Shown: positions 3,298 to 63,692 of the stretch, piece after piece
Layout: the number at the start of each line of letters is the position of its first letter
How positions within the stretch are numbered: the first letter of the stretch is position 1
Assembly (NCBI GenBank): GCA_002269645.1
Contig: NIVC01001908.1
Coordinates: 62,001 to 126,000 of the forward strand
Length of the DNA stretch: 64,000 bases
DNA from: Macrostomum lignano
Lineage: Eukaryota
Direction of reading: 5' to 3'
Position numbers and translations under genes: made by a program
The notes under the pieces: model-generated
What the model saw: the letters and a program-made list of their open reading frames with translations, nothing else
Told to the model about the DNA's origin: nothing
The model's database searches: none

Positions 3298-16389
<13,092 letters not shown>

Positions 16390-18803
16390 CCAGTCGCCAT
16401 GAAGAAAAAAATTGTTATTATTTAATTTTACCACAAATTAGTTATGATTATGTATATATAAGGATACAAAATTTGAATAATAATAGTTGTCTTAAACAAA
16501 AACTTCAATTCTAAACTAGCAAAGCAGCAATACAATAATGCTTTATTAACTAAAATTATTAACTTAAAAATCCATTAACTAGCACATAAAAGCAAAAAAT
16601 ATATAAAGGCAAAGTTACACATGAAGATCCCAACTTAACATAGACATATATTTAAAATATATTATACATTTTTTAATTCTAATAATTTTCTAGAAATAAA
16701 CAAGAAATTTTCTGAAAATTCAGACTAGACCATTTGGATGTAGGCTAAGATCATTCCAGTCCAACCAGGCTGTAGCCTACTAGTATATCTGGCCTTAACC
16801 TATTATTTAGTATTTTGCTAAAAAATAATGTAGAAATTTCAAATTTTATTGTCTGTCTACCTAAGAAAACTAGTGATTTGCAAAATTAAATATTTAATTT
16901 TGAAACAAAAAGTTGTTCTTATATTTCTCTAGCAGTAAAAATACTAAAAGCCAAATAAAATGCAAAAAATTAACAGATATCATGCCTGCGAAAAAAACAG
17001 TAATTGGGAACTGGTGAATTGAATTGAGCTGAACTGAACTGAACTTCATTGAACTGAATTGAATTTTCGATGTTTCAAAAAACTTGAAGAAAAGTGCTGA
17101 TAATTACTCTCAAACGATTATCGGCGTTTGGGCTACAGCCTACAGTTCGTTTTTGCATAGGTGGCCTCTCTTGGCTCGAACTCGAATGGATCTCAGCGAT
17201 CATCATGAAAAGCCTCATTGAATAGGCGGGATGATATATTTGGTTGACAACAATCTTTTGTATATTAAGAGCAAAAATTTGCTTTTCTGTAAATTTATTA
17301 TGTAAAACTAATACATATCTGGCGAAGGCATATGTATATCAGCGTTTTTCATTAAACTTAGGAGAAAACTTGTTTTAATAGTTAACAGTTTATTGTAATT
17401 TAAATTATAAATAGAACGCAAAACGAAACTCACCTTTGTGGCAAAGTCTAAAAATGTCTTTTGCTTACTTCTGGATTTGCTTCATATAAAGCTTGCTCCT
17501 CGCGAAGCTTTTTGGATTAAAATAGTATCATGCAAAGGCTCAGTCGAAATTGTGACGCGAAAGACCCAATTTTTTAGCCTGCAAACAACTAGTTTTCTTG
17601 TCCCCCTCGACATATCACACAGTTGCGCCCAAAAATGGACGAAATAGCGTTGTGTTGAGCGATACATATACATGTAAAACAATGTTTTACTCGCCTATAT
17701 TCACAAGTCGGTGTCCAGCTTGCCAAAACTATGTATGTTCAAATGTGATCAATGTTCACATGTGCACATGTGTGCAGTACACAGTACCCAAATACACAGT
17801 AGCCTACATGTATAGTATGAAACCAAGCTCCCTTTCTCCAAAAAATGCTTTTTCTGGACATATTTTCTGATATAAGGTAAACCTATAGATTTGAAGATAT
17901 AGAAATGTATACTTTTACGCTCGCGCGTATTATAAATTTGGAATTGAAGGTACATGTATTATGTACATGTACAAACACTGCGGTCTCTACTGACTTTGGA
18001 GGAGCCGCCATTTTGCCTTTGCTTTTTAGCTCGTATAATTTGCAAAGGGAACGCGTGTCTCCGTCTTCGAGTTGAACGGCAGTGGGCTTTTGGACTCCAT
18101 TGCTCAGTGGAGTCCATGCACAGTTCTCCTTCACTTGTTCCAATTTTCGGACTTCATGTACGAGCTAAACATGTATGATATTTCGGGTTTATGATGGCCC
18201 CTTTTATTATTTTGGCTATGAATAAATCGAGCTCTTGGGCTTCTAAGTAAAAAACTGTTCAGGGTAAATAAACATAAACCCAACGGTTGAAATTGAACAA
18301 GGACAAAAAAGTGTCTGCACAATGTTACGCGCTCGTACATCTTCGCGGTTTATCAGCGGGAAGAGGGAGAGCTGGAGAAGGAATATTGACGATTAGAGAG
18401 CAGCACATTGCACGAAGAGAACTGAAGAAACGCTGCAAATATTCTAAACACTTCACTACAGCTCAGGCGGACTTGGCCAACGCAGCCTAGCTCAGATCAG
18501 CTTAACGCTTAAGAGAATACCAACACCCGTCCCCCATTGCCACGATTGTATGGTCTTTATCTCCTTTTCTATCCCTGTCGCTCCCGTCCTCTCTCGCTTT
18601 CTCACATGTTTCTCTCTGTCAGTTTGTTTCTCAAAGTTTCCATGGAAACATTAGCCAGGCCCCAAGACGATAGACTTTCCTACTAAAGCAGAGTTTGACT
18701 GCATCGGCTCTGCGCCACTTCCCCAGTTTGTTGAGATTCTCAAGCTCACAGCCTCTCACTCAGTGCTGCCTTCTCATTCCTACTTACTCGACGGCCTTCC
18801 AAA

Positions 18804-21800
18804 ATGTCCTTATCGAGCATTGCCGTCATCGTGGCCATCTGGAGCTCTCGAGCTGCCGGTGAGACCTTCGTCTTCGACAAGAGGCCGGACCTGTGCTTCG
18901 CGGAGGCGGCCCCGGCTGCTGGCGACCAGCGCAAAGTGCTCGGAGTTGTTGACTCTCGAGTGTGCGCGGTTGAGTGCGCGGTCAACACCAGCGTGTGCTC
19001 CGTCTACTAATACCTGCCTGGCAACAAATCCTGCGTCCTTGGCAACAGCTGCGACCTGCTGCTGAAGTGGCAGAGCACTGGCGGGCCAGCGTGCGACACG
19101 CAGACGCTTCGAGATCGGGCAGCGTGCGGGTCCACGAGCGACACTGCAGCCACAACTGCAGCCTCGACTGGAGCAGTTGCTACTACAACTACAACACCAA
19201 CTACAACTACAACACCAACTACAACTACAACACCAACTACAACACCAACTACAACTACAACACCAACTACAACTACAATGCCAAGTACAACTACAACACC
19301 AACTACAACACCCACTACAACACCAACTACAACACCCACTACAACTACAACTACAACACCAACTACAACATCCACTACAACTACAACTACAACACCCACT
19401 ACAACACCAACTACAACACCCACTACAACTACAACTACAACACCAACTACAACATCCACTACAACTACAACTACAACACCCACTACAACTACAACTACAA
19501 CACCAACTACAACTACAACTACAACACCAACTACAACACCCACTACAACACCAACTACAACACCCACTACAACTACAACTACAACACCAACTACAACATC
19601 CACTACAACTACAACTACAACACCCACTACAACTACAACTACAACACCAACTACAACACCCACTACAACACCAACTACAACACCCACTACAACTACAACT
19701 ACAACACCAACTACAACATCCACTACAACTACAACTACAACACCCACTACAACTACAACTACAACACCAACTACAACTACAACTACAACACCAACTACAA
19801 CACCCACTACAACACCAACTACAACACCCACTACAACTACAACTACAACACCAACTACAACATCCACTACAACTACAACTACAACACCCACTACAACTAC
19901 AACTACAACACCAACTACAACACCCACTACAACACCAACTACAACACCCACTACAACTACAACTACAACACCAACTACAACATCCACTACAACTACAACT
20001 ACAACACCCACTACAACTACAACTACAACACCAACTACAACACCCACTACAACACCAACTACAACACCCACTACAACTACAACTACAACACCAACTACAA
20101 CATCCACTACAACTACAACTACAACACCCACTACAACTACAACTACAACACCAACTACAACTACAACTACAACACCCACTACAACTACAACTACAACACC
20201 AACTACAACTACAACTACAACACCCACTACAACTACAACTACAACACCCACTACAACTACAACTACAACACCCACTACAACTACAACACCAACTACAACT
20301 ACAACACCAACTACAACTACAACACCAACTACCAGGGGTACAACTACAGCACCAGCTACAACACTCAGTGCGCCATCTGCATTCAATGGTAAGTGCGCAT
20401 GAGAATTAAAAAACCAAATGTCGGGTTCTGGATGCTATTATAGATAACAGTGTAACAGTTTATAGCGATATCTATTTATTTTATGTCAGCAAATTATGTC
20501 AGCAACAACTTGAAGGTGAACTGCAGAAAGGCAGGTATAAAGTCGAAAGTCGAACCACTGTAGTATAACAAGACGTAGAACTCATCTTTTGGAGGCCAAT
20601 TTACTAAAAGAACACTGCGAAAAATTATTTCATCATCACAAAAGCAATGCTGGCATTTGATCTGGGGCAGTAAAAATTACTTATTCGTATAATCACAAAC
20701 AAGCACAACATATGTTACTCTGTTGTATTTTATACAGTTGTGTAGTGAAAGTTTCATATTGTTTTCTTTTTAATTGAGAAGCCCAAGGTTGTAAACACTC
20801 ATAAGTGGCACTATATCTGAAATTTTTGTTTTGCTCCTTCTCAAATCAAATATATTTGTAATAAAAATGTGGCAAGCAGGTACTCTAGGTACTCTAAGCC
20901 AATATTGTAGGTATAATGATCCATTTCAATGCATATTAGTTCCTAGATACATACATACATGCATACACAGTTTGTGCATACAACTTTGGGCTTATTAAAT
21001 GAAAAAAGACAATATAAAAATGAAACTTTCTCTACACAGGTATATCATACAATAGAGTAACCAAGGACTACTAAAGTAACATATATATAGAACGCAACAC
21101 TCGAAATCTATGGTAAATGTTTTGAAGGCAACTTTTCGCCGAAAAATACACTACAGAGATAGGAAATTTCACGATTTTCAACACTAAAACAGTGATTGGG
21201 TCTCTTAACAGTGTCAGAGAAAGTTCTAATCACACAATTTTGTGCTTCACATGCTGCTCTAACGACGCATTAATCGATCCATTATTTTAAACGTTTTTTT
21301 CAAGTGACAGACCAATTAAACATGAAAAACGATTAATGCGTCGTTAGAGCAGCATGTGAGGCACAAAATTGTGTGATTAGAACTTTCTCTGACACTGTTA
21401 AGAGACCCAATCACTGTTTTAGTGTTGAAAATCGTGAAATGTCCTACCTCCGTAGTGTATTTTTCCGGTGAAACCTGCCTTTAAAACTATTTCTGAACGA
21501 AAAGCTTTATGAATATTGATAGAGCAATAAGAAAGGCACAACATATCAAAAGATGAACACTGGATCTGCCTCCTATCGAAAGCAATAGCAATTTTTGTGC
21601 TGAAAAAATTAAAACCTCCTATCTCTGTAGTGTATTTTTCGGCGGCAAGTTGCCTTCCATTTACTTAGATTTCGAGTGTAGCGTCCTTCTACTTAAGTTG
21701 TCCTTGAGAGTAACATGCTGTGCATGCTAAATTAAAAGAATGGTAATCATCACTGCCCCAGAGCTGGCATCGATGCAACGAAATTCAATTTATTATTTGA

Positions 21801-23682
21801 TGAAAAAATGTTTTCTTCCATCTTCTAACCCGAGTAAATTAGCCGGTCTCTGACTGTTTTTACCATGGCTGCCTTCTGGCGGCATTTCTCGGGTTGTGGG
21901 CAATCCAATTGACCTACCCTTAAGGTAGCTCAATCCTAAAGTGTCCTCACGGGAGGTAGATGTGCATTCCAAAAATAACTTCTCTAAGTTTCTGCCCTGC
22001 CTTGGTTTAGGGGGGGGGGGTTGTACCTGGAGTGATTGTGACTCTGGACTGCAGTGTGGCTGAGCCCCCGGGTCGTAGTACCCACCCTGCAGGAAAGACG
22101 ATCATTCACAAAAGTGTACGGTAGAGCCCAGTCGATGCCAGCCCTGAGGCTGAGCCCCTAGTGATCCTCCTCCATTATTGCTTTTATCCCTGTCTTTGTG
22201 CTTTGTGTTTTATCCCTTGCTTTTAGCTTTTGGTCCATGGACAACTAGAGTAGTCTACTCTAGTTGTCCATGTTTTGGTCATGATCGAGCCAACCCAAAA
22301 TTTAGGAGCTAAGATCTCGCCTCTGTGAATTCCATCGGCTCCCTCGGCCCAGCTGCTGTCTCCTCTGGCTGTCTCCCTGCTTATTGTGTCTCGGCTATTA
22401 TCACTTGTGGATTGGTGTCCTGGGGAATGAGTTCGTCCCGAATCGGGGAATACCGGCTGAGTCCGGTGTCCCTTTGCTCTGTGCTGCTCCTCTCCAACCC
22501 CTGAGCTTGGGCTTATTAGAGCTGGGTGGTGAAAAAGCCTTGTGGCTTGCAGCCCTATTGGAGGTTTTATCCTGGAGGCCTGCCTGATAGGAGACTTGCC
22601 GCTGGTAAATAAGCTGCTCACACTCTTTCCCCACAAGCTAGTAGCAGCTAAGCTAGGGTAAGTCCCCGGCCTCCAATACTGGCGTCTCGGGCTTATGCTC
22701 CTAGTAGTGTCGCCCTACAAAATCCCTGCGGCAGAGCCCTTCCCTGGACTGATCCGCGCTAGGCTAAGCTTAGCACCTCGTTTAACAACAACAACAAAAT
22801 TAACCTTCTAAATAATTACACGTTCTCAGAGTTTTACACCAGCTGTTGTACGACAATGGTCCTTGCAATAAAAACTCAAATTCCATCGAACTCCCTCCAG
22901 CTCCTCCGTCGGACTCGAGCAACCAAACTGGATCGGTGCAGACTTTCACTCCGCCGAACGACGGCTGCTATCAAATCTCGGCTTGGGGCGCCAGAGGCGG
23001 CAAGTCATCCGCTAACGCGAACGGCGGCAGAGGCGCATTCAAGAGCGCCAATTTCATGCTGACCACGTCGCAAACTCTCACGCTTGTTGTTGGCAAGCCG
23101 GGAAACAGCGGCAGCAGCGGCGGAGGAGGCGGAGGAGGCGGCAGCTTTGTGTACACAACCGGCCCCAGCACGCTGCTGCTGGTGGCCGGTGGCGGAGGAG
23201 GCGGCGGCGCCGCATCTTCTTCGACGATCGGTAAGGACGGAACAAGCAGCACCGGAGGCTCTTGCAGCACATCAGACGGACAAGGCGGTGACGGTGAAAG
23301 CTTTAGAAACTCTGGCGCGGGCGGAGCTGGTTGGAGCTCAGATGGAACAGCCCTGGCCACTGACAAAAACGGAGGCCACGGTGGAAGAAGCATCGGCGGC
23401 AACTGGGCCGGAGGCAACGGAGGGCCGGGCAGCAACGGCTTCGGCGGCTACGGTGGAGGCGGCGGAGGCGGCAACAACAATGATGAAGATGGAGGCGGCG
23501 GCGGAGGAGGCGGCTACTCTGGCGGCTGCGGAGGACCCGGCGACAGCAGTGACGGCTACGGAGGCGGCGGTGGCAGCTACGCGAGCTCATCCGGCAAGCA
23601 GGCCACGGGAACGACAGGCGGCAACGGTGAAGTCTTCGGCAAGGTGAGCATCGCTCAGGTGGACGGCTCTCTGTGCAGTTAA
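18804..23682 (+). CDS. Secreted PAN/Apple + Thr/Pro mucin stalk + ALK/LTK-type glycine-rich domain protein; interrupted by an in-frame TAA (possible null allele, pseudogene or sequence error)
   Basis: Exon 1 (18804-20388): hydrophobic signal MSLSSIAVIVAIWSSRAAG, PAN-like CAVECAVNTSVCSVY*YLPGNKSC, then ~380 aa of T/P repeats in the same frame; GTAAGT donor at 20389. Exon 2 (~22832-23682): YQISAWGARGG, LTLVVGKPG, GGGGGSFVY, LLVAGGGGGG, typical of the ALK/LTK glycine-rich domain. Joining the two exons is inferred. Confidence 0.7.
19180..20330 (+). repeat. Coding ACT/ACA/CCA trinucleotide-derived repeat (poly-Thr with interspersed Pro), mucin domain
   Basis: In frame with the upstream signal peptide and the downstream donor site. 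Confidence 0.85.
21062..21706. mobile_element. Non-autonomous foldback DNA transposon (CAAGG...CCTTG termini, 8-bp TSD), P-element-superfamily-like
   Basis: TSD AGAGTAAC at 21054-21061 and 21707-21714. Internal 111-bp inverted arms at 21166-21276 / 21330-21440. Right part matches the element at 49410-50106. Confidence 0.85.
22022..22700 (+). mobile_element. Possible LTR-like segment in the mucin gene intron
   Basis: G-run (PPT-like) at ~22010-22020 followed by TGTACC; TGGCGTC (PBS-like) at ~22680. No second copy or internal ORF. Confidence 0.25.
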
Positions 23683-27189: not shown

Positions 27190-28451
27190 CCATTTTTAGC
27201 GAAGTGGTATTCAAGGAGCACCAGGCCAAGGTATCAGGAGAGCATTCCAAAATTGATCAAAAGGAGATACTACTTTTTAGAACGCAGATACTACTAATCA
27301 GAAACCAACGCATCAGGACGCAGACAGAACCAACGAACTCAAAGCGATTCCGACGAAAACGAAAATCGAGAAGGCAATGTCAGCAATGAAAGACACAGCG
27401 CCGAGCGAAGATAAAATGCGCCTGAGACACCTGAAACATGCTCCATCATCGATAAAAGAGGAGACATACAACAGAGTCCGCTTCCTGTTTACGCAACTCG
27501 CAAACGACTGGAAGGACTCAGAAAAAAACGGACTCACATACCGCTATTCAAAAGAGGCGACCGGCGAGACCCACACAACACCCGCATCCTGGCCAACATA
27601 GCTCGTAATTCGAAACTGGGTTGAAGCGCTGTCGCTGTTTGACGATAACCAATGCGGGTTTTGTCGAAACAGATCCACTGCAGACAGCGCACAGACATTC
27701 GTGAGACTACATTCGAGGACCTAGAAGAGTACCTCACCGTGAACAAGCGGCACGCTAATCAGAACATGGAACACTACTTCGCCATCCTGCTAGATCCACC
27801 AGAAAGCATACCTGCGTGTCTGCAAACCGCTACTGTGGAAATTGCTACGATGCTATGGCATTCCAGAAGAGACTATCGAGAAGCTGCAAGACCTCCGTGA
27901 ATTCACGGCCTGCAGAGTACAAGGCGAAAAAGCAGCGAGCGACAAATGGTACCCTGAACGTGGACTTCGGTAAGGGTGCCCTACGTCACCCGCCCTCTTC
28001 AACATCTACCAACAAGCCAGCATACGGAGAGCCGAGCAAAAGAGAAAGCAAAAAGCGGAAGAAAGGCAACTGACGTGCGGAATAGAATGGGCGTGCCTGA
28101 AGGGACAAGCGAGCAAACGAATTCAACTCTGAGATGCGAACAAACTGCTTCCAAACATCCCTGTTTGCCGACGGCACGACACTCATAGGCAACACTCACA
28201 CGACACGACACTTCGCAGCGAACTAGAAGGCGTTTTGGAGGTGGTCAAGAATCTGCAATGTGCATGGCAGATTCTGAAGAAAGACAAGCGACAACAAAGA
28301 AGGGGAGATGAAAATTGGCACCATCGAGGGAGGGAATGTCAGAACACTAGGAAGCTGGACAGGGAGGAAAACGGACATGCGCAACCGCATCCAAAGAGCG
28401 ACGAAAAGCTGGCTATTTAAATCCGAAAGACACAATCCAAAGTCGTCGTGG
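27190..28451 (+). pseudogene. RTE-type LINE reverse transcriptase relic, 5' part
   Basis: Frameshifted motifs KAMSAMKDTAP, IPLFKRGDRRDP, DDNQCGFCRNRSTAD, LWKLLRCYGIP, GLR*GCPTSPALFNIY, LFADG (catalytic DD degraded). Confidence 0.85.
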
Positions 28452-30456
28452 TGTAGAGATCTCCAAACATTGTAGACTACTAGAAGTAGTAAGATAAAAT
28501 TACGAATATAATTTTAAATAGCATGCGTCATACTCTATTTTTAGTAATATCAGTAATATCACAAAAACAGTGAGTGATCATTCTATAGTTCGAAAAACCG
28601 GTTTTCAGCATCTATTTCCAAATATGGTAAATGTTAACCCGAATGCGACCCAAGTCTCACTCTTTTCTATTCAAAAACCCCACCTGTCAAAGGATAAAAT
28701 TCCTTTCTTGACCTCATAAAAAACCGGTTTGGGCTCAAAGGTCGACTTAAATTGTCTATAAATACAAGCGAAAAATTTGAGCTGAAATCTCAGACTCGGA
28801 GTGACCTCAAAAGATCTTGGGCTTTGCCAGAGCAGCCAAATGAGGCCACATCTCCGGGAGAGACAAATGCCAATTGCAGGTAAGCCTTTGTCAGAGTCTT
28901 TGTTATTTGATTATTGAGAGCTGTGTTATTGCCGGCCGATACTGATCAGTTGATTTTATTGAGTTATTGAATTTGAGGCCTCCCTATTCCTGAGGGATTG
29001 GATAGGATCTGCGGACCGATTCCGATACTCTTAGACAATTATTAACTGATTGATTTTGGTACCCTAGAGTAACCGATAGGGGCACACGACTCCGATTCCG
29101 TTATTTCTAGAAGAAGACGCCCTTTCTTGAGGACCTCGTTATTGTTATAGAGTTCACTTTGTTATTAGGGCGCATCTCTGATTCTGATTTCTGAACTCGA
29201 GGAATACATTGACGTCGACGGATTAAATTGTTACGCTCTCATACTCGGCCGACTTTAGAGTTCAAGAAAGGGAACTCCGGAGGAACACTACGTTGAGGAG
29301 ACGAGCTCTACCGACCTGCCCGACAAATTGAAGAGTTGATTCGGGAGGTGATCAGTCCCCCGAAAACTCCCACTTCCAGACACTTAAGCCTGGGAACAAA
29401 ATCAGTGATCACTTACTGTTGCGGGCTCCTCTTCTTTGTCGCGCGTGTCTGTAGAGCTCGTCTCCTTAGAGCTGTTCCTCCCGGGGTAGTCTTCTTGAAG
29501 TCTAGAGTCGGCCGAAAGTGAGAGCGTAACAATTAAATCGACGTCGCAGTATTTCTTCAAGTGCAGATATCAATGTATTCCTCGAGTGCCGAAATCAATG
29601 TCAACGATGCGCCCTAATAACAAAATCAACTTCAATACGAGGTCCTCCAGAAAGGGCGTTTTCTTCTAGAACTAACGGAATCGGAGTCGTGTGCTCCTAT
29701 CGGTTAATCTAGGATAACCAAAATCAATCAAATCAATAATCCTCTAAGGGTATCGGAATCGGTCCGCAGATCCTGTCCAATCCCTTAGGAAAAGGGAGGC
29801 GTCAAACTCAATAGACTCAATAAAATCACTGAACAGTAACGGCCGGCAATAACAATCGCTCTCAATAATCAAAATAACGAAGACTTGAACAAAGCTTACC
29901 AATTGGTGTTTATCTCTTCCTCAGAGATATAGCCTCGTTGGCTGCTCTTGCAAAGCCCAAGATCTTTGGAGGCTGCTCCGAGTCTGAGATTTCAGCTCGG
30001 ATTTTTCGTTTATATTTATACACAATTTGTCGGCCTTGAGTCGACCTTGAGCTCAAAACCGGTTTTTTTGATGAGTTCACGAAAGGAATTTTATTATTTG
30101 ACAGGTGGGGTTTTTGAATAGAAAGGGGTGAGACTTGGGTTACATTCAGGTTAACATTTACCATATTTGGAAGTTCTAAAAATAGATGTCGAGAACCGGT
30201 TTTTTCGAACAATAGCATAGCCACTCGCTGTTTGCGTGATATGACTGGTATTACTAAAAATAGAGTATGACACATAGCTATTTTTTAATTTGTATTCATA
30301 ACTTTATGTTACTACTTTTAGTAGGCTACTGTGTTTGAAGATCTCTACAAAATAAGAGGAGCCCGCAATAGTAAGTGATCACTAAATTCTGTTCCCAGGC
30401 TTGCGGTCTGGAAGTGGGAGTTTTCGAGTGACTGATCACCACTCGTAAACTCTTCA
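28452..30456. mobile_element. 2005-bp inverted-repeat insertion with A-B-A'-B' architecture, TG...CA termini and probable 4-bp TSD
   Basis: A 28452-29311 is the diverged reverse complement of A' 29450-30349. B ~29329-29437 is the reverse complement of B' 30350-30456. Flanks are GTGG/GAGG. LINE reading KVV|EACIES resumes across the insertion. Confidence 0.8.
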
Positions 30457-30750
30457 GAGGCATGCATCGAGAGTGTGCTACAACTCCACACGCCAACGTC
30501 CGCCCATTCAACAGGTCGGAGATCAAAGCACTGCAGCGTGTACTTGACCGCATTTACCGACACATATGGAGCTCCAAGATTATGGAGCCGCTTCGTGAGA
30601 TGGAAAGCACATACAAGACGTCAGATCAAAACTGCAAGTCCAATAAGTCAAGATAGAAAAGCCCACACCCCCCCCCCTGATCCGAATCGGGCACCTCCGA
30701 ATCAGGCAACGCATCATCCGCAAGGATCACTGGGACCAACAGCCATGTAA
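30457..30750 (+). pseudogene. RTE-type LINE relic, 3' continuation of 27190-28451
   Basis: EACIES...VRPFNRSEIKALQRVLDRIYRHIWS resembles the post-RT region of RTE-like LINEs. Confidence 0.7.
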
Positions 30751-31029: not shown

Positions 31030-31551
31030 CGAACAACAACAACGACAACAACAGAGTACGCTGCCAGTTCGCAAAAGCAGCGTCAGATGGCGCGCTTCGA
31101 AGCTTGGGCGCGAACAAAGGCCGCACCGCCGGCAGAGTCCGGGGCGCCGGCGTCAGCCAGCAGACAGTCGACGTAGCGCCGAGTCCTCGCCTGTCCCCGC
31201 CGGTAGGGTGCCTGCAACGTAAGTAGCAGCACCTCCTGCACCGGCTCCGGACAGTAGGCCTCGGCGCGGATGACGTGGCCTGCCAGCTGGAGTCGCCGAC
31301 GGCGCAGCAGATCGCTAGGACGGGCCAGGCCGGCGCGATGACAGAGCGCCGTGTTGGTGACTCGCTCGTTGCCGATCTTGAAGGTGGCGCGCAGCAGGCC
31401 AGCGTGCGCCGTGTCGACTTGAGCCTCGAGCGAGTCTATCAGCGTCCAGGTCTCGGCGTTGTATAACAGGACGGTCTCGATCACCGCCTGGAACAGCGCC
31501 GCCCTCTGGCGGTCCGGTAGGGCCTCGGACTGCAGGACTGACCTTATAGAC
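31030..31551 (-). mobile_element. 5'-truncated RTE-clade LINE 3' end with (GTT)n tail
   Basis: LFQAVIETVLLYNAETWTL...LRRRRLQLAGHVIR...RRGQARTRRYVD* is a typical RTE C-terminus; TGTTGTTGTCGTTGTTGTTG tail on the minus strand. Confidence 0.85.
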
Positions 31552-31571
31552 CTCCGTCCTGCAGGACGGAG

Positions 31572-32200
31572 CCGAACGCACTCGTCCATTCTTCTGCGCC
31601 AGGCCTCCATGCAGCCCTCGAAGGCTTTTTTGGGAATACCTACTAGCAGTTTCGTCGTCGTGGCCCTTCTGAAGGTATCAACATCAGGAAATTGAGTTTG
31701 AGCTTGGGAACCTCCTTGAGCTTGGGAAATAGGAAAAAATCGCACGGAACTAGATTGGAAGAATATCGAAGCTGGTCTAGCACTGTGACATTCCTATTCG
31801 CGAGATACTCCCTGACACTTGGAGCATTGTGAGCTGGCTCATTGTCCTGATGAAGGAACCACGAGGTTGCTTCCCACAAATCGTGTCTCTTGTCTCGCAC
31901 TGGGGGAAGCAGTTGCTGCAGGATCCCTTTGTACACATGCTGATTGATGGTTTGACCTTGGCGCAGAAACTCCATGTAGATAATGCCTCTGACATCTGAC
32001 ATTGAAGGTCTTCCACTCCTGGAGTCGTCCTCGACCTCCTCCCGCCCTCCTTAAATCGTTTGTGCCACTCAAAACTCGGGAGCGAGACATAGCATTAACT
32101 CCATACACTTTCCGCAACAGTGCAAGTGCTTCCGAGGGCGATTTATTGAATCGGACCAAAAACTTTAGATTGGTTCGTTGCTTGGTGCTCATTGGCACGA
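31572..32200 (-). pseudogene. Internally deleted mariner (DD34D) transposase relic
   Basis: MSTKQRTNLKFLVRFNKSPSEAL (HTH N-terminus), DDSRSGRP, WFLHQDNEPAH and YSSNLVPCDFFLFPKLK (degenerate DNAPAH and YSPDLAPCD motifs), with frameshifts. Confidence 0.9.
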
Positions 32201-33817
32201 CGATTGTTAAAAACTTACTGGACGTTACTAATAGCACATATTGGCACAAAAGTGATGATCAGCTGAAATTGCAGGACAGAGCTCCTGTTATATGCTGCTA
32301 CAGCCTGCAACATGTCGCAAATTGATAGTGCATACAGAAGCTGCGCTGTAGGCACAGTCCTGGAACTTTTCTGACGCATTTGCACCACTTCAACAACGAG
32401 AGCGACATGTCGCGAGAGCGACCATACAAGCACGGAAACATGTGCGAATCATGATGATAATGATGATGCTGATGATGATGATGATGAACTAGTTAAGTAG
32501 ATTACCTGACACATAAACAGGGTTTACATTGGCAAGTGTCCCGATTTGAGCTCAGAGTGGTCTCACAGTCGGTCGAGAGTTCCAAAGCACTCAACCTGTC
32601 CTCGAATTAAGCCCATGCAGCCCGCATACTCGAGCATTTTTGCACACTTCAACTATTCCTGCAACGGCATTTAGCGAGCGGCTTCTCAAAGCTTTCTGAG
32701 GGGGGGATCGGATTATTTAAGAATATCCCACGGGACTCTCCGCTTGATGCTTGCGAGCTGAAATCAAAACCGATTGTTGCAAATCTCTCTCGTATCCTCC
32801 ATCAGCTGGGATTTCATATTTCAGCTATAGAAAATTTTCCAGCAGTTTCAGTTCCACATGCCCAGGCTAGAAAAGATAGTTTAAAAAATTGAAATTCGCT
32901 CGCTTTTCAAATGTTTTGTTCAAAAAAGCGCCTCCAGGACTTACCATGCCAACAGCCAGCGATTCTCTCCAGCAAAATAGCAGCTGAATGCCTCATAGAA
33001 ACAGAACAACAGAAGCTGGCTTTCAAGGATTGAATAGTCTCAGTGCCTGCAGTCGACTCCACATTAAAATAATACTTCAATATTTAGATCGGCGGGGCTG
33101 ATTGTGGCGTGCAGCCTCTATTCAACGGTTGCGTGCGTCATACAGGCAAATTTGCATACAGAAAAGCAGAGATCAATTGCCGTCAATTTTGCCTGGCTTT
33201 CAGTTACCTATTCAGCTTTGTGCATTTTTTTTCATCTGCGCTCGCAGTTACGCCTCATCGCTATAATTAAAAGGAATGAATGATAGCTCAACTAAAATAC
33301 AACATCTCGCTCGGCTATTACTCTCTCCTAATCGCTGGCTTCAAAATATTGCTTCAAAGCTAAACGTTTCTTCAAAAATTGTATTTTTCAAATCGTCACT
33401 TAATTGATCCGATAATTGGCGAGAAAGCCTTTGAGATGACAGGGTCTTCATCCCACAGCATTTTTTTGTCAATGGGCTTCAAAATGATACTAAATTTTCG
33501 TACGTTATAGCCCGTATCTCATAAAAAACTTGGCGAAAATCAGTGCTGTGCATTGCAGACTAAATAAAGCTGGAAAACTTAACTGCACACTTTTAAACTT
33601 GGAGGTAAAAGCTGTTATCGGTAAAGATCAAGAAAATTAATTTGTACCGACGAATGCAAGCTGCGTTTACTAATGTGCACCGACTAAAACAGCCGTCGGG
33701 ACTGCACAGACCTCTGCATAAAAGTATATTTTCGTCACATTTGATTGATGATTGACAGAGAGCGGCCAATAAGACTCTAACAGTTTAACTTCGCAAAAAG
33801 GTGTTATCTGAGTTAAT

Positions 33818-43368: not shown

Positions 43369-46300
43369 TCATACTACAAGCGGCTTAGCCAGTCTCCGTG
43401 ACACTAGCAAATCGGAGCACATCACCCCGTCCAGGTGAGGCCGCTGTCCAGACTTCAAACGAAAATTGACTCGCCTGATCCCATCAGGATCCGCCGCAGT
43501 GGAAGCCGAAGCGGCCGGCGCCACAAACACCTCCAGTGGAGTGTCAATAAATGCGTCTTTCAAACAGCCGATCGCCGCCTCGGACCAGAGCTCGGCGCTG
43601 TCCATAATCTGAGCCAGACGGACTGGCACGACGAGAGGCGGCAGCGAGGCGAAGTCGATGCCGTCATTAGCAGCAGCAGCAGCAGCGGTCGACATGTCGA
43701 ACGGGACAAACCGGTTAGTGCAGTCTAGGGCCAAGGTGTCGCCGCGATCCGGCAGGTAAACAATGGCGCCTTCCAGACAGACGCCGCGCAACAGGCGGCC
43801 GGTTTTAGAAGACTGCAACAGCAGGGAAGTGCCGGCCTGCGGCAGTTGAGTCAAACGGCTCGACTGCGGCAGCTTGACACGGGATAGCCGGTCTGGAATT
43901 ATTTAAAGTAATAAACAAATTATAGCGGGACCGATTGACTACTGTTAAGTAGGAAGGGAAGATTATTTATCATAGTGTAAATAAAAACTTAAGTAATGAG
44001 CGCATTTAATAATTAATAAATCGACCTAATGGGCCCCATTTTATGGGGGCTGTCGCATCCATGTCTCCAGTGCCACAACTACACTATCACCTGCTACTGT
44101 AACTGCAACTACTTCTCTTATTTCTACTCGTACTAGTAGTTAATAAGTACTGCTACCACTACTACTACTACTACTACTTACTACTACTACCACTAATACT
44201 ACTTACTAAATAAAGCACACCTAAAGACCTCACAAACCTTCCAGCTGTTGCACTTTAGACTGTCCAGCGGGCCCAATTTCGGTCACGTGTAACAGCCGCC
44301 TATTAGTTGTTATCCCGCACAGCTGACCATCAAAAGCGCCCGGCAGGCTGGCTAGGAGCTTTGATTGGCCAGTTATTCGCAGCAACTCTGCAGTAGTCAG
44401 CGAATTTGAAGCTTTCAACGCCATAGAAGCTCGACTCGGCGCCTGGGTCGGTGCTCGAGTCTGTTGCTGATTCGGTGCCTGAGTCGGTGCTCGAGTCGGT
44501 GTCTGACTCGGTGCTCGAGTCGGTGCCAGAGTCGGTGCCTGATTCGGTGCCTGAGTCGGTGAGTGAGTCGGCGCCTGAGTCGGCGCCTTTGATGCCTGAA
44601 TCGACGGCGTCGGCTGCAGAGATTTGCCAGTGACAGATGGGGATTCCTGATCGGCCTCGAGCACGTCCACAGGGATAAGCATGAATCCGTCGCAGGCGCG
44701 ACTTTTGCCGCAGCGACGAATAGTTAATAAGCCATTGTGCAGTTCGGCAAGCCGGAGCAGCTGGGCTGTGGCATCGGCCAAGCCAGGATCGTCATCCTTC
44801 AGGCCACGGAATGACACCTGTCATGGGGGGGGAGGGCGAACCGGTGAGATTAAGAGATTTACGAGCTATTACACACATCCTCAAAACCCATTATCAATCC
44901 CAGATCCTCCAATGATGCCTTAATCAATCCCAGATCCCAAAATCCCCTAATCAATCCCAGATCCCAAAATCCCCTAATCAATCCCAGATCCCAAAATCCC
45001 CTAATCAATCCCAGATCCCAAAATCCCCTAATCAATCCCAGATCCTCAAATCCCCTAGTTAATCCCAAATCCTCAAATCCCCTAATCAATCCCAGATCCC
45101 AAAATCCTCTAATCAATCCTAGATCTCCAAATCCCAGATCCTCAAATACCCTAATCAACCACAAATCTTCAAATCTCCTTCCAATTTTATATTCTCAAAA
45201 AATCCCAACCCTTAAAAAATCGTTATATTAATTTCATTCCCACAAGCAGCCTCAGTTACCATAGCAACTATAAATTCTCACTTGCAAGGCCCGGCACGGT
45301 GGCACGGCCAGACTAGCTGGCAGCGACCTCAATTCCGCTGCCTCTACCCGCCTTTCGACGCCAATGTCGACTAGAAATGCCCGAAACAGATTGACGCTGA
45401 GCGACTCAATGAGTTGAACTCGGCAAGCCAAACCATCGATGCATGCTATCAGGCCGCCGCTAGTACCAACGTTGTCCCTGGCAACCGATGCAGATATTTT
45501 CGATGCCGGATTAGACGCCCACGAGTCCAGTTCGGTCTGAAAATCCGGCTCGCCCGGGTTACTAGGCGGGAGTGCGCTAACCCAGAATTTGGCTGCACTG
45601 CGAAACTGCTTGGCGTCCAAATAAATACTTAGCATGGCCGTTTGGTCCAGCCTCAGCCAGTCTAACCGCCTGCGCCTGAAATTTTTAGCATTGCGGTTAC
45701 AGGCAGTGACGTAAGGCCTCCACCCGCTGCTATGATCTTCGCTCCCTCCTCACACCCGCTGCTTCTATGACCTTCGCTCCCTTCTCACCCCTGCTCCTTC
45801 TATGACCTTCGCTCCCTCTATGACCTTCGCTCCCTCCTCACACCCGCTGCTTCTTTGACCTTCGCTCCCTCCTCACAGCCGCAGCTTCTATGACCTTCGC
45901 TCACTTCTCACACCCGCTGCTTCTATGACCTTCGCTCACTTCTCACACCCGCTCCTTCTATGACCTTCGCTCACTTCTCACACCCGCTGCTTCTATGACC
46001 TTCGCTGACTTCTCACACCCGCTCCTTCTATGACCTTCGCTCCCTTCTCACACCCGCTCCTTCTATGACCTTCGCTCACTTCTCACACCCGCTGCTTCTA
46101 TGACCTTCGCTGACTTCTCACACCCGCTCCTTCTATGACCTTCGCTCACTTCTCACACCCGCTCCTTCTATGATCTTCGCTGACTTCTCACACCCGCTCC
46201 TTCTATGACCTTCGCTGACTTCTCACACCCGCTCCTTCTATGACCTTCGCTGACTTCTCACACCCGCTCCTTCTATGACCTTCGCTCACTTCTCACACCC

Positions 46301-47168
46301 GCTCCTTCTATGATCTTCGCTCCCTCCTCACACCCGCTGCTTCTTTGACCTTCGCTCCCTTCTCACACCCGCTCTTTCTATGACCTTCGCTCACTTCTCA
46401 CACCCGCTGCTTCTATGACCTTCGCTCACTTCTCACACCCGCTGCTTCTATGACCTTCGCTCACTTCTCACACCCGCTCCTTCTATGACCTTCGGGCTTC
46501 GCTGACTTCTCACACCCGCTCCTTCTATGACCTTCGCTCCCTTCTCACACCCGCTCCTTCTATGACCTTCGCTGACTTCTCACACCCGCTCCTTCTATGA
46601 CCTTCGCTCCCTTCTCACACCCGCTCCTATACTCCTGCTGCCAGCTTACACAGCAGCGGGCGGCGAACTGCAGGGAACATTGTTATGCAACGGTTGTGGC
46701 GGCGGTGGCACAGCGGCGGCGGCACCAGCGGTAGGTGCCGGCAGAGACGACAACAGTGGCAAAATTGGCAAACTGTCGTTGGAAGCAATCGACGATCTAG
46801 CTGGTTGGCTAAGACTATCATTCGAACTACGGTTTGCCGTGTTATTATTGCGCTGATTATAACTATTTCGATTAGTCTTGTGCCGTACAGTTAGTTTAAC
46901 ATTGGGCTCGACAGCATAGCCATTGAACTGATTGACAGCCTGCTCTGCTCCAGACCAATCGCGCATGTTCACAAAGCCTTGCAGAGTGCCATTGTCGAAG
47001 TGCTGTTTAATGAAAACTGATTCCACAGGTCCACAGGTCTCAAACATGCTCCATATTCTCCCCTACAGAGGTTGCATTTTTAATGGTTAGAGCAATATTG
47101 AAGCATAACAGTTAAAGTGAAGAAGTTCTAGTTAGTAATTACCTCTGCATAGTAGCTGGGCATCCCCG
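43369..47168 (-). CDS. RRM + two extended-Tudor-domain protein (TDRD10-like architecture); 5' end not resolved
   Basis: Exons 47143-47168, 46650-47062, 45282-45675, 44238-44817, 43369-43892 with consistent phases. RRM: GMPSYYAEGRIWSMFETCGPVESVF...QGFVNM...AEQAVNQFNG. Tudor: FWV...CRVQLIE...AFLVDIG...LRSLPASLAVPPCRAL. Second degenerate Tudor: VYLPDRGD...FASLPPLVVPVRLA...WSEAA. Confidence 0.8.
44870..45170. repeat. 27-bp intronic minisatellite
   Basis: CTAATCAATCCCAGATCCCAAAATCCC units. Confidence 0.9.
45725..46628. repeat. 35-bp intronic minisatellite
   Basis: TCTCACACCCGCTCCTTCTATGACCTTCGCTCACT, about 25 units. Confidence 0.97.
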
Positions 47169-49409: not shown

Positions 49410-50106
49410 CAAGGACGACTTAAGTAGGACGGGAAACCTCGTTTCTTAGAAAAGTTTTGAAGGCACTTTCTCCCGAAAAAATACACTACGGAGATAGGAA
49501 GTTTTCATATTTTCAGCACAAAAATTGTTATTGCGTTTGATAGGAGGCAGATCCAGTGTTCATCTTTTGATATGTTGTGCCTTTTTTTATTGCTCTATCG
49601 GTATTTATAAAGCTTTTCGTTCAGAAAATTAGGATTCTATGTTAATTTTTTATTCTACGCATATTTTTTGCGTGTCCTGTGCTTGAAATACATTAGAATG
49701 CCACAGCTCGGCTCTTTGGTTTCATGAGTCTATTTTATCATTCTTACCCGACTGTGTAGCAAATATTTGTAACAGAGATGATAAAATAGGTTCATAAAAC
49801 CAAATATTGGAGCTGTGTCATGCATTTTTGTGATTTTTAGATACAGGAAATATACGTAGAATAAAAAATTAACATAGAATCCTAATTTTCTGAACGAAAA
49901 GCTTTATAAATACCGATAGAGCAATAAAAAAGGCACAACATATCAAAAGATGAACACTGGATCTGCCTCCTATCAAACGCAATAACAATTTTTGTGCTGA
50001 AAAAATGAAAACTTCCTATCTCCGTAGTGTATTTTTTCGGGAAAAAGTGCCTTCAAAACTTTTCTAAGAAACGAGGTTTCCCGTCCTTCTACTTAAGTCG
50101 TCCTTG
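49410..50106. mobile_element. Foldback MITE with ~250-300-bp TIRs, CAAGG termini and 8-bp TSD (P-element-superfamily-like)
   Basis: TSD GTGTTCCT at 49402-49409 and 50107-50114. Arms are near-perfect reverse complements. Confidence 0.9.
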
Positions 50107-50139: not shown

Positions 50140-51023
50140 GGTGCAAGTTGTTTCGTCTGCTGATAGTTCGTCTGCTGAGCAGACGAAAAGTTTTCTCTTT
50201 TTAAAACTGTTCGTCTGCCGGGAAATGGGGGTGGGGCCGGGTGATGTGGAGTGGGGTGGGGAGCTGCGCAACCCACAACCTCTTTATTAACTTTGTTAAA
50301 TTGCTGTAGGAACGGATTGGTCTTTTCAAAATGAATCTTCAAAATATGTCATCCGTGCATAGAACGAAATGCAAGTTCATCGTTCATCAAATGCAAGGAT
50401 TTGCATTTTCAATCGTTACACACAATTAGCCAAGTCATAAATACCTGGGCTAAATAACTGACTGGCTTGTATTGTGATAAAAATCTATTTAAAACAGCTC
50501 ACCTCAAAAGTCACATATCGTTATCTTTTTCTGTAATCTTTTTCAGTTCCAACTTTTAGCCTATTGCTAGGGTTTGTATAGCGATAACTACGTACGTAGC
50601 ACGTAAATAACTCACTATAATTACTTAGCTTGTAAATTAGATTCAATATATTCAGCAACATTGAAAATTCGTCATCACAGAAGATTCCGAGAGTGCAGGT
50701 AAAGTCTCTCAATCTTTGTGAGTGACGCAACTTAGCTATGCCGCGGCAGACTTGAGTTGAAGAATGATCGAAGTGGGGGGAGCTGTGTGCGAGCTAGGGT
50801 TCGACGGATTGAACTATCCCACGCTCTCACATTCTCTCACTCGCTCAAACTCTCAAAATCTCATTCATTCACTCCCTCATTTATTCACACTCTCACTTAT
50901 TCTCTCCCTCTCTCACTCACTCACTCACTCACTCACTCACTCATGCACTCACTCACTCACTCACTCACTCACTCACTCACTCACTCACTCATGCACTCAC
51001 TCACTCACTCACTCACTCACTCA

Positions 51024-51078
<55 letters not shown>

Positions 51079-53440
51079 GATCTCTCTCTCTCTCTTTCTC
51101 TCTCTCTCAGATGAGTGAGAAGATGAGCTAGAGAGAGAAGAGAGGAGAGAAGAAAGGGGAGAGAGGAGTGGAGGGGAGATTAGAGGAGAGAGGTGAGGAG
51201 ATGAAAGGAGAGAGAGGAGATGAGAAGAGGGGAGAGGAGAGATGAGAGGAGAGTGAGCTGAGAGTGGAGATTGGAGAGAGGCTGACAGTGGAGAGAGACT
51301 GAGAGTGAGCTGAGAGTGGAGATTGATGGAGAGGCTGAGAGTGGCCGAGAGAGGCTGAGAGTGAGCTGAGAGTGGAGATTGGAGAGAGGCTGAGAGTGGA
51401 GAGAGGCTGAGAGTGGAGATTGGAGAGAGGCTGAGAGTGGAGATTGGAGAGAGGCTGAGAGTGGAGATTGGAGAGAGGCTGAGAGTGGAGAGAGGCTGAG
51501 AGTGGAGAGAGGCTGAGAGTGGAGATTGGAGAGAGGCTGACAGTGGAGAGAGACTGAGAGTGAGCTGAGAGTGGAGATTGATGGAGAGGCTGAGAGTGGC
51601 CGAGAGAGGCTGAGAGTGAGCTGAGAGTGGAGATTGGAGAGAGGCTGAGAGTGGAGAGAGGCTGAGAGTGGAGATTGGAGAGAGGCTGAGAGTGGAGATT
51701 GGAGAGAGGCTGAGAGTGGAGATTGGAGAGAGGCTGAGAGTGGAGAGAGGCTGAGAGTGGAGAGAGGCTGAGAGTGGAGATTGGAGAGAGGCTGAGAGTG
51801 AGCTGAGAGTAGAGATTGGAGAGAAAGTGAATTGAGTGGCTGGGTGAAAGTGAATTAAGTGGTTGAGTGGCTGGGTGAAAGTGAATTAAGTGGTTGAGTG
51901 GCTGGGTGAAAGTGAATTAAGTGGTTGAGTGGCTGGGTGAGATCAGTGAATTAAGTGGTTGAGTGGCTGGGTGAAAGTGAATTAAGTGGGTGAGTGGCTG
52001 GGTGAAAGTGAATTAAGTGGTTGAGTGGCTGGGTGAAAGTGAATTAAGTGGGTGAGTGGCTGGGTGAAAGTGAATTAAGTGGGTGAGTGGCTGGGTGAAA
52101 GAAAAACTTCCAGCTCGAAATCTATTCGCATTTCTGGCCAGCTGCTCAGCAGTTTGAGGATTTACTCCTAAAAATCATCGCGCAGAGAGTCGGCAATCAA
52201 AGCACCTTCAGCTATTTCTGCTGCTGGCTCGAATCGGCATCGCTTCGCCTCGTTTTTTACTTCCCAATGCATCTCTCTTAATTCCAGCTGCTTTGTCAGA
52301 TCTGTGTGGCCGGCTCACATGGAAAACACCATCAGCAGTCTGCCTCACTGAGCCATTGCACTTCAAGTCTTCATTGCGGACGATGCACTTCCAATAATTG
52401 CAGCCAGCTTTGCCTCCGTTCCGCCCTAGAAGATATCCAAACGAGGATACAAGGAGATCACCACCGCGTTTACTAATACCGCGTTTCAGCTCAAAATGTT
52501 CTTGCTGCGACTCAAGCTGCACTTCAACGAGTGGCGTCGGATCCTGTAGTCCATCGTAATTTCGATCCGCGGCAGCACCGGCGTGGACAGCTGCAGGTGG
52601 ATCGGCGGCAGCACCGGCGTGGACAGCTGCAGGTTGGATCGGCGGCAGCACCGGCGTGGACAGCTGCAGGTGGATCGGCGGCAGCACCGGCGTGGACAGC
52701 TGCAGGTGGATCGGCGGCAGCACCGGCGTGCATGGACTGCTGGTAGATGCATGGGCGGCGGCTGTCGGCACCTACCAAGTTTGGTATCATGTATTTCATT
52801 TCGACAATTTTTTCACTGACATACACATACACTGCATACATATGCCTTTTCTTAAAAAGGGATAGAAAAACGATAATGTGATCAATTACTTTGCATAACT
52901 TTTCTCATTTACAGCGGGAGCAAATCCAGATAAATGAAGCGTCGTCTTCTAGAATCTGACGATACTCCTTTTGGCTTATGCCTGAACCACATATTTGGTG
53001 CTGCCATTGACTGCAATCATCACATTGCAAAGCTTGCTGTCGAGTGCTCACACACTTTCTACAAATGACAACAGATGTCTTGCATCAGAGAAATTTTGAA
53101 TGAGAATAACTATTCGCCGTTTTTTTCTTTATCAAATTTTTAACAGCTTCCGTTCCATGCCACTGTTTTTAGTTAAGCTTTCTCATTTTAGGTGTATATT
53201 GTAAAATAGTTTGTTAAAATGATGAAAGACCCATATACATGCAGCGCTTTATTATAACAAATGTTAACGGACAGAGAAGTTGTCCATACAGAGGCAGCTC
53301 CCCAGTCCCCCAGCTCCCTAGTCCCCACCCCACTCCTCATCCCCACCCCATTTCCCAGCAGACGAACAGTTTTAGAAGGAAAGGGCGTTTCGTCTACTCA
53401 GCAGACGAACTGTCGGCAGACGAATGAACTGCAGGAAACC
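50140..53440 (-). mobile_element. Mutator/MULE-like DNA transposon relic with FLYWCH zinc-finger ORF
   Basis: ~150-bp inverted termini (50140-50300 / 53270-53440). Imperfect 9-bp TSD GGCCTAGGG/GGCCTCGGT. ORF SKRGGDLLVSSFGY...YWKC..R....C...V...H followed, after a frameshift, by LARNANRFR. Confidence 0.7.
50900..52100. repeat. Composite microsatellite/minisatellite block: (TCAC)n, (CA)n, GA-rich 16/24-bp units, 31-bp units
   Basis: Seen directly inside the MULE relic. Confidence 0.95.
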
Positions 53441-55677: not shown

Positions 55678-55678
<1 letters not shown>

Positions 55679-55732
<54 letters not shown>

Positions 55733-55745
55733 TATATATATATAA
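55679..55745. repeat. (TA)n microsatellite
   Basis: Seen directly. Confidence 0.95.
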
Positions 55746-58731: not shown

Positions 58732-58769
58732 GTAAGAAGAATGTGCTCTTAATTAGACTGGGATTAATC

Positions 58770-63671: not shown

Positions 63672-63692
63672 GATAGATAGATGGATAGATAG

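What the first reader, a model, noticed from the sequence alone, without database searches (positions are those of the whole stretch)
28452..30456. A-B-A'-B' foldback insertion of unclear class splitting a LINE reverse transcriptase
Seen: ~860-900-bp arms A and A' are visibly diverged inverted copies, each bounded by TGTAGAG...CTCTAC(A). The ~110-bp spacer B is repeated in inverted form outside the right arm (B'). The whole unit runs TG...CA with GTGG/GAGG flanks and the LINE frame resumes exactly. A contains a TATA box (~28758) and a GTAAG donor (~28879). Established: DIRS1 retroelements have inverted terminal repeats plus an internal region complementary to the right-end extension; Ginger transposons have TGT ends and 4-bp TSDs; solo LTRs are TG...CA. 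No single class fits all features. Inference: a non-autonomous element with a distinct replication intermediate, or two head-to-head LTRs with rearrangement; it would give ~0.9-kb dsRNA if transcribed.
Basis: partly seen in the sequence, partly recalled or inferred. Interest (0 to 1): 0.72.

Follow-up and report, generated by a model that had tools for sequence, protein, structure and literature searches.

The report
One LTR-like repeat nested in another
The odd "A-B-A'-B' foldback" is two copies of one ordinary ~1-kb LTR-like repeat in the flatworm Macrostomum lignano, where one copy landed backwards inside the other and the pair sits in a dead LINE, so it is a routine nested transposon insertion and not a new kind of element.

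Summary
The repeat layout is real. A (28452-29327) and A' (29435-30349) are inverted copies at 83% identity. B (29329-37) and B' (30350-30456) are inverted copies at about 88%.

The layout resolves into a plain nested insertion. An inner element, 29329-30349, reads TGAAGAG...CTCTACA and is flanked by a perfect 4-bp direct repeat, AAAT/AAAT. Removing it plus one AAAT leaves a 980-nt outer element, TGTAGAG...CTCTTCA. That outer element aligns end to end with the reverse complement of the inner one (84% identity) and runs seamlessly across the junction.

The outer element is flanked by GTGG/GAGG. Nineteen LINE relatives show that exactly 4 extra bases sit at the site, so this is a second 4-bp target-site duplication.

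Both copies therefore belong to one non-coding ~1-kb family with TG...CA ends and a conserved TATA box. The head and tail share no repeat beyond 7 nt. The family is most likely a solo LTR of a Ty3/Mdg4-type retrotransposon, which are abundant in this genome.

"B'" is the 3' end of the outer copy. DIRS1-like, Ginger and fold-back-cDNA readings are not needed and fail specific tests.

The window is Mlig_3_7 contig NIVC01001908.1. The finding is ordinary and of low interest.

The parts
27281..28447 (+). Left part of the host: a decayed LINE ORF2 (reverse transcriptase and conserved C-terminal region) ending ...KTQSKVV.
   Evidence: RVT_1 hit. It aligns at 34% with P0001. Full-length relatives have APE plus RT.
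28448..28451 (.). Outer target-site duplication, left copy (GTGG).
   Evidence: Nineteen LINE relatives have no length variation here. The window has exactly 4 extra nt, and removing them restores KVVEACIES.
28452..29328 (+). The last 4 nt (AAAT, 29325-29328) are the target of the inner insertion.
   Evidence: Colinear with rc(inner copy) positions 1 to about 921.
28757..28764 (+). TATAAATA box of the outer copy, with TCAGAC about 30 nt downstream.
   Evidence: At position 306 of E_out. The same motif is at position 330 of the inner copy on its own strand. It lies next to a conserved 23-nt block.
29329..30349 (-). Inner element copy (E_in), 1021 nt, in reverse orientation. On the + strand it reads TGAAGAG...CTCTACA.
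   Evidence: Flanked by perfect AAAT/AAAT. Its reverse complement aligns end to end with the reconstituted outer copy at 84%.
30350..30353 (.). Inner target-site duplication, right copy (AAAT). The left copy is 29325-29328.
   Evidence: The inner copy has a single AAAG at the homologous position, while the outer copy has AAAT on both sides of the insert.
30354..30456 (+). Outer element copy (E_out), 3' 103 nt, ending ...CTCTTCA.
   Evidence: It continues the alignment with rc(E_in) seamlessly across the junction.
30457..30460 (.). Outer target-site duplication, right copy (GAGG).
   Evidence: It matches the left copy GTGG at 3 of 4 positions.
30461..30656 (+). Right part of the host LINE ORF2 (...EACIESVLQLH / ANVRPFNRSEIKALQRVLDRIYRHIW...), with a 2-nt frameshift about 30 nt after the insertion.

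Best explanation
The 2,005-bp block is not one element. It is two copies of a single ~1-kb non-coding repeat family, here called E. In its own orientation E reads 5'-TGTAGAG...CTCTTCA-3'. Shown: copy 1 (E_out) inserted into the C-terminal coding region of a LINE ORF2 and duplicated 4 bp of target (GAGG, with the left copy now GTGG). Copy 2 (E_in) later inserted in the opposite orientation into copy 1, 103 nt from its 3' end, and duplicated 4 bp (AAAT). Its 3' end (B) ends up in the middle, and the displaced 3' end of copy 1 (B') ends up outside. That gives A-B-A'-B'. Inferred: TG...CA ends with 4-bp staggered duplications are the signature of a retroviral-type DDE integrase. E has a conserved TATA box, no coding capacity and no terminal direct or inverted repeats of its own beyond 7 nt. 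E is therefore most likely a solo LTR left after LTR-LTR recombination removed the body of a Ty3/Mdg4-type retrotransposon. On that reading, two full elements inserted and each later collapsed to a solo LTR. I put nesting of two copies of one family at about 0.95, and E being a solo LTR at about 0.7.
For: (1) A perfect 4-bp direct repeat AAAT flanks 29329-30349, whose ends are TG...CA. (2) Joining 28452-29328 to 30354-30456 gives a 980-nt sequence that aligns colinearly, end to end, with rc(29329-30349) (1021 nt): 812 matches, 155 mismatches, 84% identity. The alignment runs straight across the join, CGACAAAT|AAGAGGAGCCCGC against CGACAAAGAAGAGGAGCCCGC. This is an empty-site reconstruction validated by the second copy. 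(3) The outer copy has TG...CA ends and GTGG/GAGG flanks. Nineteen LINE relatives with no length variation across the site show exactly 4 extra nt, and removing them restores the family motif VVEAC(I/V)ES with correct spacing to R, W/F and EIK. (4) All five TGWAGAG sites in the block fall at positions the model accounts for: the four element ends plus one internal motif of the inner copy at 29450 (the corresponding site in the outer copy has decayed to TGGTAGAG). (5) There is no Pfam hit in any of the six frames and no Rfam family. Head against tail of E shows no direct or inverted repeat above shuffles. TATAAATA is conserved at position 306/330 of both copies. The 5' end TGTAG fits the TGTNR pattern of Gypsy LTRs (PMC2836005). 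(6) The host is M. lignano. LTR retrotransposons make up 21% of that genome and are mostly Ty3/Mdg4 (PMC5730564; PMC12801592). (7) The suggestive compensatory changes between B and B' (p about 0.02) fit two diverged family members better than two arms copied from each other at insertion.
Against: Only these two copies of E could be examined. No other copy is in the window or in the other M. lignano locus (L002) that could be searched. The tools gave no way to search the rest of the genome. E has therefore never been seen here as a pair of direct LTRs around gag-pol with a PBS and PPT, and 'solo LTR' stays an inference. The outer duplication is imperfect (3 of 4). The 3' end is ...TTCA rather than the commoner ...ACA. 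No polyadenylation signal is conserved in both copies.
Confidence: 0.88

Rival explanations
1. The two nested copies are real, but E is a self-contained ~1-kb non-autonomous element mobilised as such by an integrase-like DDE enzyme. It could be a Ginger-like cut-and-paste element or an LTR-only parasite. It would not be a solo LTR left by recombination.
For: Both copies are 'solo', both have 4-bp TSDs and TG...CA ends, and the start is TGTAG. The 3' 107 nt form two hairpins with suggestive compensatory changes between copies, which could be a cis-acting signal.
Against: Ginger elements have 40-270-bp TIRs and CCGG/CCGT or RTATAY targets (PMC2836005). E has only a 6-of-7 terminal match and nothing above shuffles beyond that, and its targets are AAAT and GAGG. 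Solo LTRs are the common fate of LTR elements, and this genome is 21% LTR retrotransposon.
Confidence: 0.1
2. The block is one internally deleted DIRS1-like (tyrosine-recombinase) retroelement. A would be the left ITR, B the internal complementary region, A' the right ITR and B' the right extension.
For: The topology resembles lITR-ICR-rITR-rE as described in PMC3266345. B begins exactly with the complement of the block's right terminus.
Against: DIRS1-like elements make no target-site duplication and have NTT-type termini. Their left ICR is 36-110 nt and fully complementary to the left end, and it overlaps the right ICR by 3 nt. Their ITRs are at most 316 bp and the right extension at most 75 bp. 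Here there are two nested 4-bp duplications and TG...CA ends. Only 7 nt are complementary to the left end, and they are separated from B by 17 nt. The arms are about 875 bp and the extension is 107 bp. The AAAT duplication and the colinearity of the reconstituted outer copy have no explanation in this model. No YR, RT or MT remnant is present. No flatworm appears in the DIRS1 survey text.
Confidence: 0.02
3. The whole block arose in one step as an aberrant, self-primed (fold-back) cDNA of a small LTR-like element and was then integrated as a unit.
For: The ends of B can pair, and there is a TTT/AAA microhomology at the B/A' transition. The block as a whole has TG...CA ends and a 4-bp TSD.
Against: This model needs several ad hoc steps and a canonical PBS and PPT that are absent in either orientation. 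It predicts arms that were identical at birth. It cannot explain the duplicated AAAT, or why the 'loop plus arm' is itself a complete TG...CA copy of the same element.
Confidence: 0.02
4. The inverted layout is an assembly artefact of the repeat-rich Mlig_3_7 assembly.
For: The genome is highly repetitive and the assembly is redundant.
Against: The two copies differ by 16% with many indels, so they are not a collapsed or duplicated read. Both junctions carry intact target-site duplications, and the LINE flanks join correctly.
Confidence: 0.01

Closest known systems
Nested solo LTRs of Ty3/Mdg4 (Gypsy)-type LTR retrotransposons
   Same: The ends are TG...CA with a TGTNR start. Each of the two insertions has a 4-bp target-site duplication. 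The element is non-coding, about 1 kb long and has a TATA box. One copy inserted into another copy of the same family. The host genome is rich in such elements.
   Different: No full-length partner with gag-pol, PBS and PPT has been seen. The 3' end is TTCA rather than the usual ACA. The outer duplication has one mismatch.
DIRS1-like tyrosine-recombinase retrotransposons (lITR - ICR - rITR - rE)
   Same: There is a superficial topology of long inverted repeats, with an internal segment complementary to an extension beyond the right repeat.
   Different: Target-site duplications are present. The termini are TG...CA. There is no real left ICR and no 3-bp circular junction. The arms are about three times longer than any listed ITR. 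No YR, RT or MT remnants are present. The layout is fully explained by nesting.
Ginger1 / Ginger2 DNA transposons
   Same: The duplication is 4 bp and the 5' end follows TGTNR.
   Different: There are no 40-270-bp terminal inverted repeats, the targets are not CCGG/CCGT or RTATAY, and there is no transposase remnant.

Membership tests
Nested transposon insertion (one copy inside another) | The inner segment has complete element ends and is flanked by a target-site duplication. | tested here: met
   29329-30349 reads TGAAGAG...CTCTACA and is flanked by AAAT (29325-29328) and AAAT (30350-30353).
Nested transposon insertion (one copy inside another) | Removing the inner segment plus one duplication copy restores an uninterrupted outer element. 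| tested here: met
   The joined 980-nt sequence aligns end to end with the inner copy at 84% and is seamless across the join.
Solo LTR of an LTR retrotransposon (Ty3/Mdg4-type) | 5'-TG...CA-3' ends, with the Gypsy pattern TGTNR. | tested here: met
   Both copies read TGTAG...TTCA. The pattern is taken from PMC2836005. The 3' end deviates by one base from YNACA.
Solo LTR of an LTR retrotransposon (Ty3/Mdg4-type) | A short (4-6 bp) target-site duplication. | tested here: met
   AAAT/AAAT is perfect. GTGG/GAGG is supported by the 4 extra nt seen against 19 LINE relatives.
Solo LTR of an LTR retrotransposon (Ty3/Mdg4-type) | Non-coding, with promoter signals (U3 TATA box). | tested here: met
   No Pfam hit in six frames. 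TATAAATA is conserved at position 306/330. A polyadenylation signal is not conserved in both copies.
Solo LTR of an LTR retrotransposon (Ty3/Mdg4-type) | The same sequence occurs elsewhere as two direct repeats flanking PBS - gag/pol - PPT. | not testable with these tools
   No search of M. lignano genomic DNA was available. There is no other copy in the window or in L002. The protein and metagenome routes were empty.
DIRS1-like retrotransposon | Integration without target-site duplication, with NTT-type terminal trinucleotides that match a 3-bp circular junction in the ICR. | tested here: not met
   A 4-bp duplication and TG...CA ends are present. Seventeen nt lie between the would-be left and right ICR.
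DIRS1-like retrotransposon | A left ICR fully complementary to the start of the left terminus. | tested here: not met
   Only TGTAGAG/CTCTAC (7 nt) is complementary. Both arms agree that the inner and outer sequences differ beyond that.
DIRS1-like retrotransposon | [quoted passage not shown] | tested here: inconclusive
   B is complementary to B', but this follows automatically from the nesting.
DIRS1-like retrotransposon | Tyrosine recombinase and RT/RH/MT genes, or remnants of them. | tested here: not met
   No Pfam hit in six frames of the block.
Ginger DNA transposon | Terminal inverted repeats of 40-270 bp. | tested here: not met
   The head against rc(tail) local score is not above shuffles. 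Only 6 of 7 terminal nt match.
Ginger DNA transposon | A 4-bp TSD at CCGG/CCGT (Ginger1) or RTATAY targets (Ginger2). | tested here: not met
   The length is 4 bp, but the targets are AAAT and GAGG.

The most novel reading that the evidence does not exclude
E may not be a recombination remnant. It could be a free-standing ~1-kb 'LTR-only' non-autonomous element that a Ty3/Mdg4 integrase and reverse transcriptase mobilise as a single unit. Its conserved 3' double hairpin (two compensatory pairs between the copies) would act as the cis signal, and it would tend to insert into its own relatives.
Probability: 0.08. Interest if true: 0.4.

Novelty: already known. Interest (0 to 1): 0.07.

Why it matters
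It matters little biologically. Nested LTR insertions are routine in repeat-rich genomes.

The practical lesson is for annotation. An inverted self-nested insertion near one end of an element mimics the DIRS1 "ITR - ICR - ITR - extension" layout. It can be told apart by looking for an internal target-site duplication and by rebuilding the outer copy.

The pair could still act locally as a source of hairpin RNA and small RNAs if transcribed, as any inverted repeat pair can.

Tried and rejected
(1) DIRS1-like reading. I compared the block feature by feature with PMC3266345 and PMC7192593. It fails on TSD, termini, left ICR, sizes and coding remnants.

(2) Fold-back or self-primed cDNA, twin priming, rolling circle with strand switch, and autointegration. 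I worked through these on paper. All needed ad hoc steps and none explains the duplicated AAAT, so I dropped them once one search showed the nesting.

(3) Canonical PBS (TGG...) or PPT next to A in either orientation: none found. This is moot for solo LTRs. A tRNA-Leu-like stretch in B was recalled from memory only, and neither ARAGORN nor Rfam supports it.

(4) Hammerhead or other ribozymes, as for Penelope-like elements or retrozymes: no Rfam hit at E <= 10 other than one chance match.

(5) Looking for more copies:
- the ORF in A' against 5.8 billion proteins gave no hit;
- ten ORFs looked up exactly were not in the collection;
- 24-mer and 21-mer scans of the metagenome contigs gave 0 hits;

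(6) Walking to the paralogous contigs NIVC01000598.1 and NIVC01001607.1 to see the homologous site. This was not feasible. Flanks are limited to 10 kb, no annotated single-exon gene lies close enough, and NIVC01001607.1 starts only 19.8 kb upstream of COQ10.

(7) Supplementary LTR consensus sequences of PMC12801592 are not held.

(8) Covariation in B. The built-in shuffle control is uninformative with two sequences. My own simulation gives p of about 0.02, which is suggestive only.

Full report
**Where the window comes from.** An ORF at 60182-60913 encodes a COQ10 homologue. It is identical to M. lignano proteins P0007 and P0008 and differs by one residue from PAA65904.1. Locus L003 is contig NIVC01001908.1 of GCA_002269645.1 (Mlig_3_7), and it is 100% identical to window 50203-64000. 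Record position therefore equals window position plus 62,000, and the block is at record 90,452-92,456. Two paralogous contigs are about 92-97% identical. That fits the known redundancy of this assembly (PMC5730564). The window is full of minisatellites and transposon debris.

**Checking the observation.** The block 28452-30456 matches its own reverse complement over 1.9 kb.
- A (28452-29327) against rc(A') (29435-30349): 720 matches, 144 mismatches and 63 gap columns, which is 83%.
- B (29329-29437) against rc(B') (30350-30456): 11 substitutions and 4 gap columns.
- The ends are TGTAGAG... and ...CTCTTCA, with flanks GTGG and GAGG.
- The TATA box and the GTAAG site exist and are conserved in both arms.
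- The host is a decayed LINE. It has an RVT_1 hit, is 34% identical to P0001, and its full-length relatives carry an APE endonuclease plus RT.

**The outer junction.** Plain excision of the block keeps an open frame, but it is the wrong one. P0001 reads ...AKVVEACIESTMIFNASVRPF... across the site. I collected relatives of P0001 and aligned twenty of them. Nineteen cover the site, and they show no length variation there. The window fits them only if four more bases (one GWGG) are removed, which gives KVVEACIES. A separate 2-nt frameshift 30 nt downstream must also be allowed. The spacing to the conserved R, W/F and EIK is then exact. The insertion therefore added the block plus 4 nt, a 4-bp target-site duplication whose left copy has since mutated (GTGG against GAGG).

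**The key result.** For a long time I treated the block as one element. I tried to derive A-B-A'-B' from DIRS1 replication, fold-back cDNA synthesis, twin priming and similar schemes. While tabulating the flanks of each module I found that 29329-30349 (B plus 12 nt plus A') is bounded by TG...CA and flanked by a perfect direct repeat. AAAT lies at 29325-29328 and again at 30350-30353.

Removing that segment and one AAAT joins 28452-29328 to 30354-30456. The resulting 980-nt sequence aligns colinearly, from first to last base, with the reverse complement of the removed 1021-nt segment. There are 812 matches and 155 mismatches, or 84% identity. The alignment runs straight through the join: CGACAAAT|AAGAGGAGCCCGC in the outer copy against CGACAAAGAAGAGGAGCCCGC in the inner copy. 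The inner copy has one AAAG where the outer copy has AAAT on both sides of the insert.

This is the classical proof of a nested insertion. The "12-nt gap" between B and A' noted earlier is simply part of the inner copy. The extra 16 nt of arm homology beyond CTCTAC is explained in the same way.

**What the repeated unit is.** Both copies belong to one family, E, of about 1 kb. Its features are:
- It reads 5'-TGTAGAG...CTCTTCA-3' and made a 4-bp duplication in two independent insertions.
- It has no detectable coding remnant in six frames and no Rfam family.
- It has no direct or inverted similarity between head and tail above shuffles, apart from the 6-of-7 terminal match.
- TATAAATA is conserved at position 306/330, followed by a well-conserved block.

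TG...CA ends with a TGTNR start and short duplications are the mark of retroviral-type integrases and of Gypsy LTRs in particular (PMC2836005). Ginger elements share the TGTNR start and the 4-bp duplication. They also need 40-270-bp TIRs and specific targets, and E has neither. M. lignano is 21% LTR retrotransposon, overwhelmingly Ty3/Mdg4.

The most economical reading is that E is a solo LTR. Two elements of one family inserted, one into the LTR of the other, and each later lost its body by LTR-LTR recombination. The order of collapse is unknown. This last step is inference, because I could not search the genome for paired copies.

**The DIRS1 resemblance.** The published anatomy is lITR - internal - lICR/rICR overlapping by 3 nt - rITR - rE. 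There is no target-site duplication and the termini are NTT-type. ITRs are 66-316 bp and extensions 9-75 bp. The block fails on duplication, termini, left ICR, circular junction, sizes and coding remnants. The one feature it "meets", B complementary to B', is a by-product of inserting an inverted copy near the 3' end of its relative. No flatworm is mentioned in that survey's text.

**A side observation.** The 3' 107 nt of E (B and B') fold into two hairpins. Two predicted pairs changed on both sides between the copies while staying paired. A third pair went from A.C to T-A. In 2,000 simulated neutral divergences, two or more such pairs arose in about 2% of cases. That is only suggestive. It fits two family members that diverged while active better than two arms copied from each other.

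**What could not be done.** No further copy of E was reachable. The paralogous sites could not be reached with 10-kb flanks.

**Verdict.** The block is an ordinary nested pair of LTR-like repeats inside a dead LINE. Interest is low.

Noticed in passing
window 49410-50106; related copies 21089-21708: There is a 697-bp near-perfect palindromic (foldback) element with TIRs starting CAAGGACGACTTAAGTAG. It is flanked by an 8-bp direct repeat GTGTTCCT, which looks like a hAT-type MITE. Three arm copies of the same family lie at 21.1-21.7 kb.
   Followed up: partly
window 29329-29437 and 30350-30456: The 3' 107 nt of the LTR-like element fold into two hairpins, one with a GTGATCAGT loop and one around the palindrome AGTGATCACT. 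Two to three base pairs changed on both sides between the two copies. Simulation gives p of about 0.02.
   Followed up: partly
window 31086-31793 (-) and 31646-32258 (-): A second LINE C-terminal fragment (LLYNAETW...) lies on the minus strand just downstream. A mariner/Mos1-type transposase remnant (Transposase_1, HTH_48) overlaps it. The region is a transposon pile-up.
   Followed up: no
window 50203-64000 = NIVC01001908.1; L002 = NIVC01001607.1; L004 = NIVC01000598.1: Three paralogous copies of the RPL39 - COQ10 - VMA21 neighbourhood exist in Mlig_3_7. L002 is about 92-97% identical to the window, with minisatellite length differences. This is consistent with the hidden polyploidy and redundancy of this assembly.
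   Followed up: partly
whole window: Minisatellites are unusually dense, with 63 TRF rows and periods of 11-255 nt. Several create long spurious ORFs on both strands, for example at 12165-13932 and 19182-20323.
   Followed up: no
L001 (ENA ERZ25074608 contig ctg184879), 875-4773: The closest database relative of the host LINE RT (P0001) lacks an APE domain in its called ORF. It is preceded by a PIF1-helicase ORF and a small ORF with a weak GIY-YIG hit. This arrangement may just reflect fragmented gene calls.
   Followed up: no
window 22816-23682 (+): A 288-codon open frame encodes a glycine-rich protein (ISAWGARGG...GGGGGGSFVY...). It has no start codon of its own, so it is probably an exon of a real gene. 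It was not identified.
   Followed up: no
window 13153-16437 (-), 44233-47062 (-): Host genes are present: a TPR-repeat protein, and an RRM plus Tudor domain protein. Both are multi-exon and on the minus strand.
   Followed up: no
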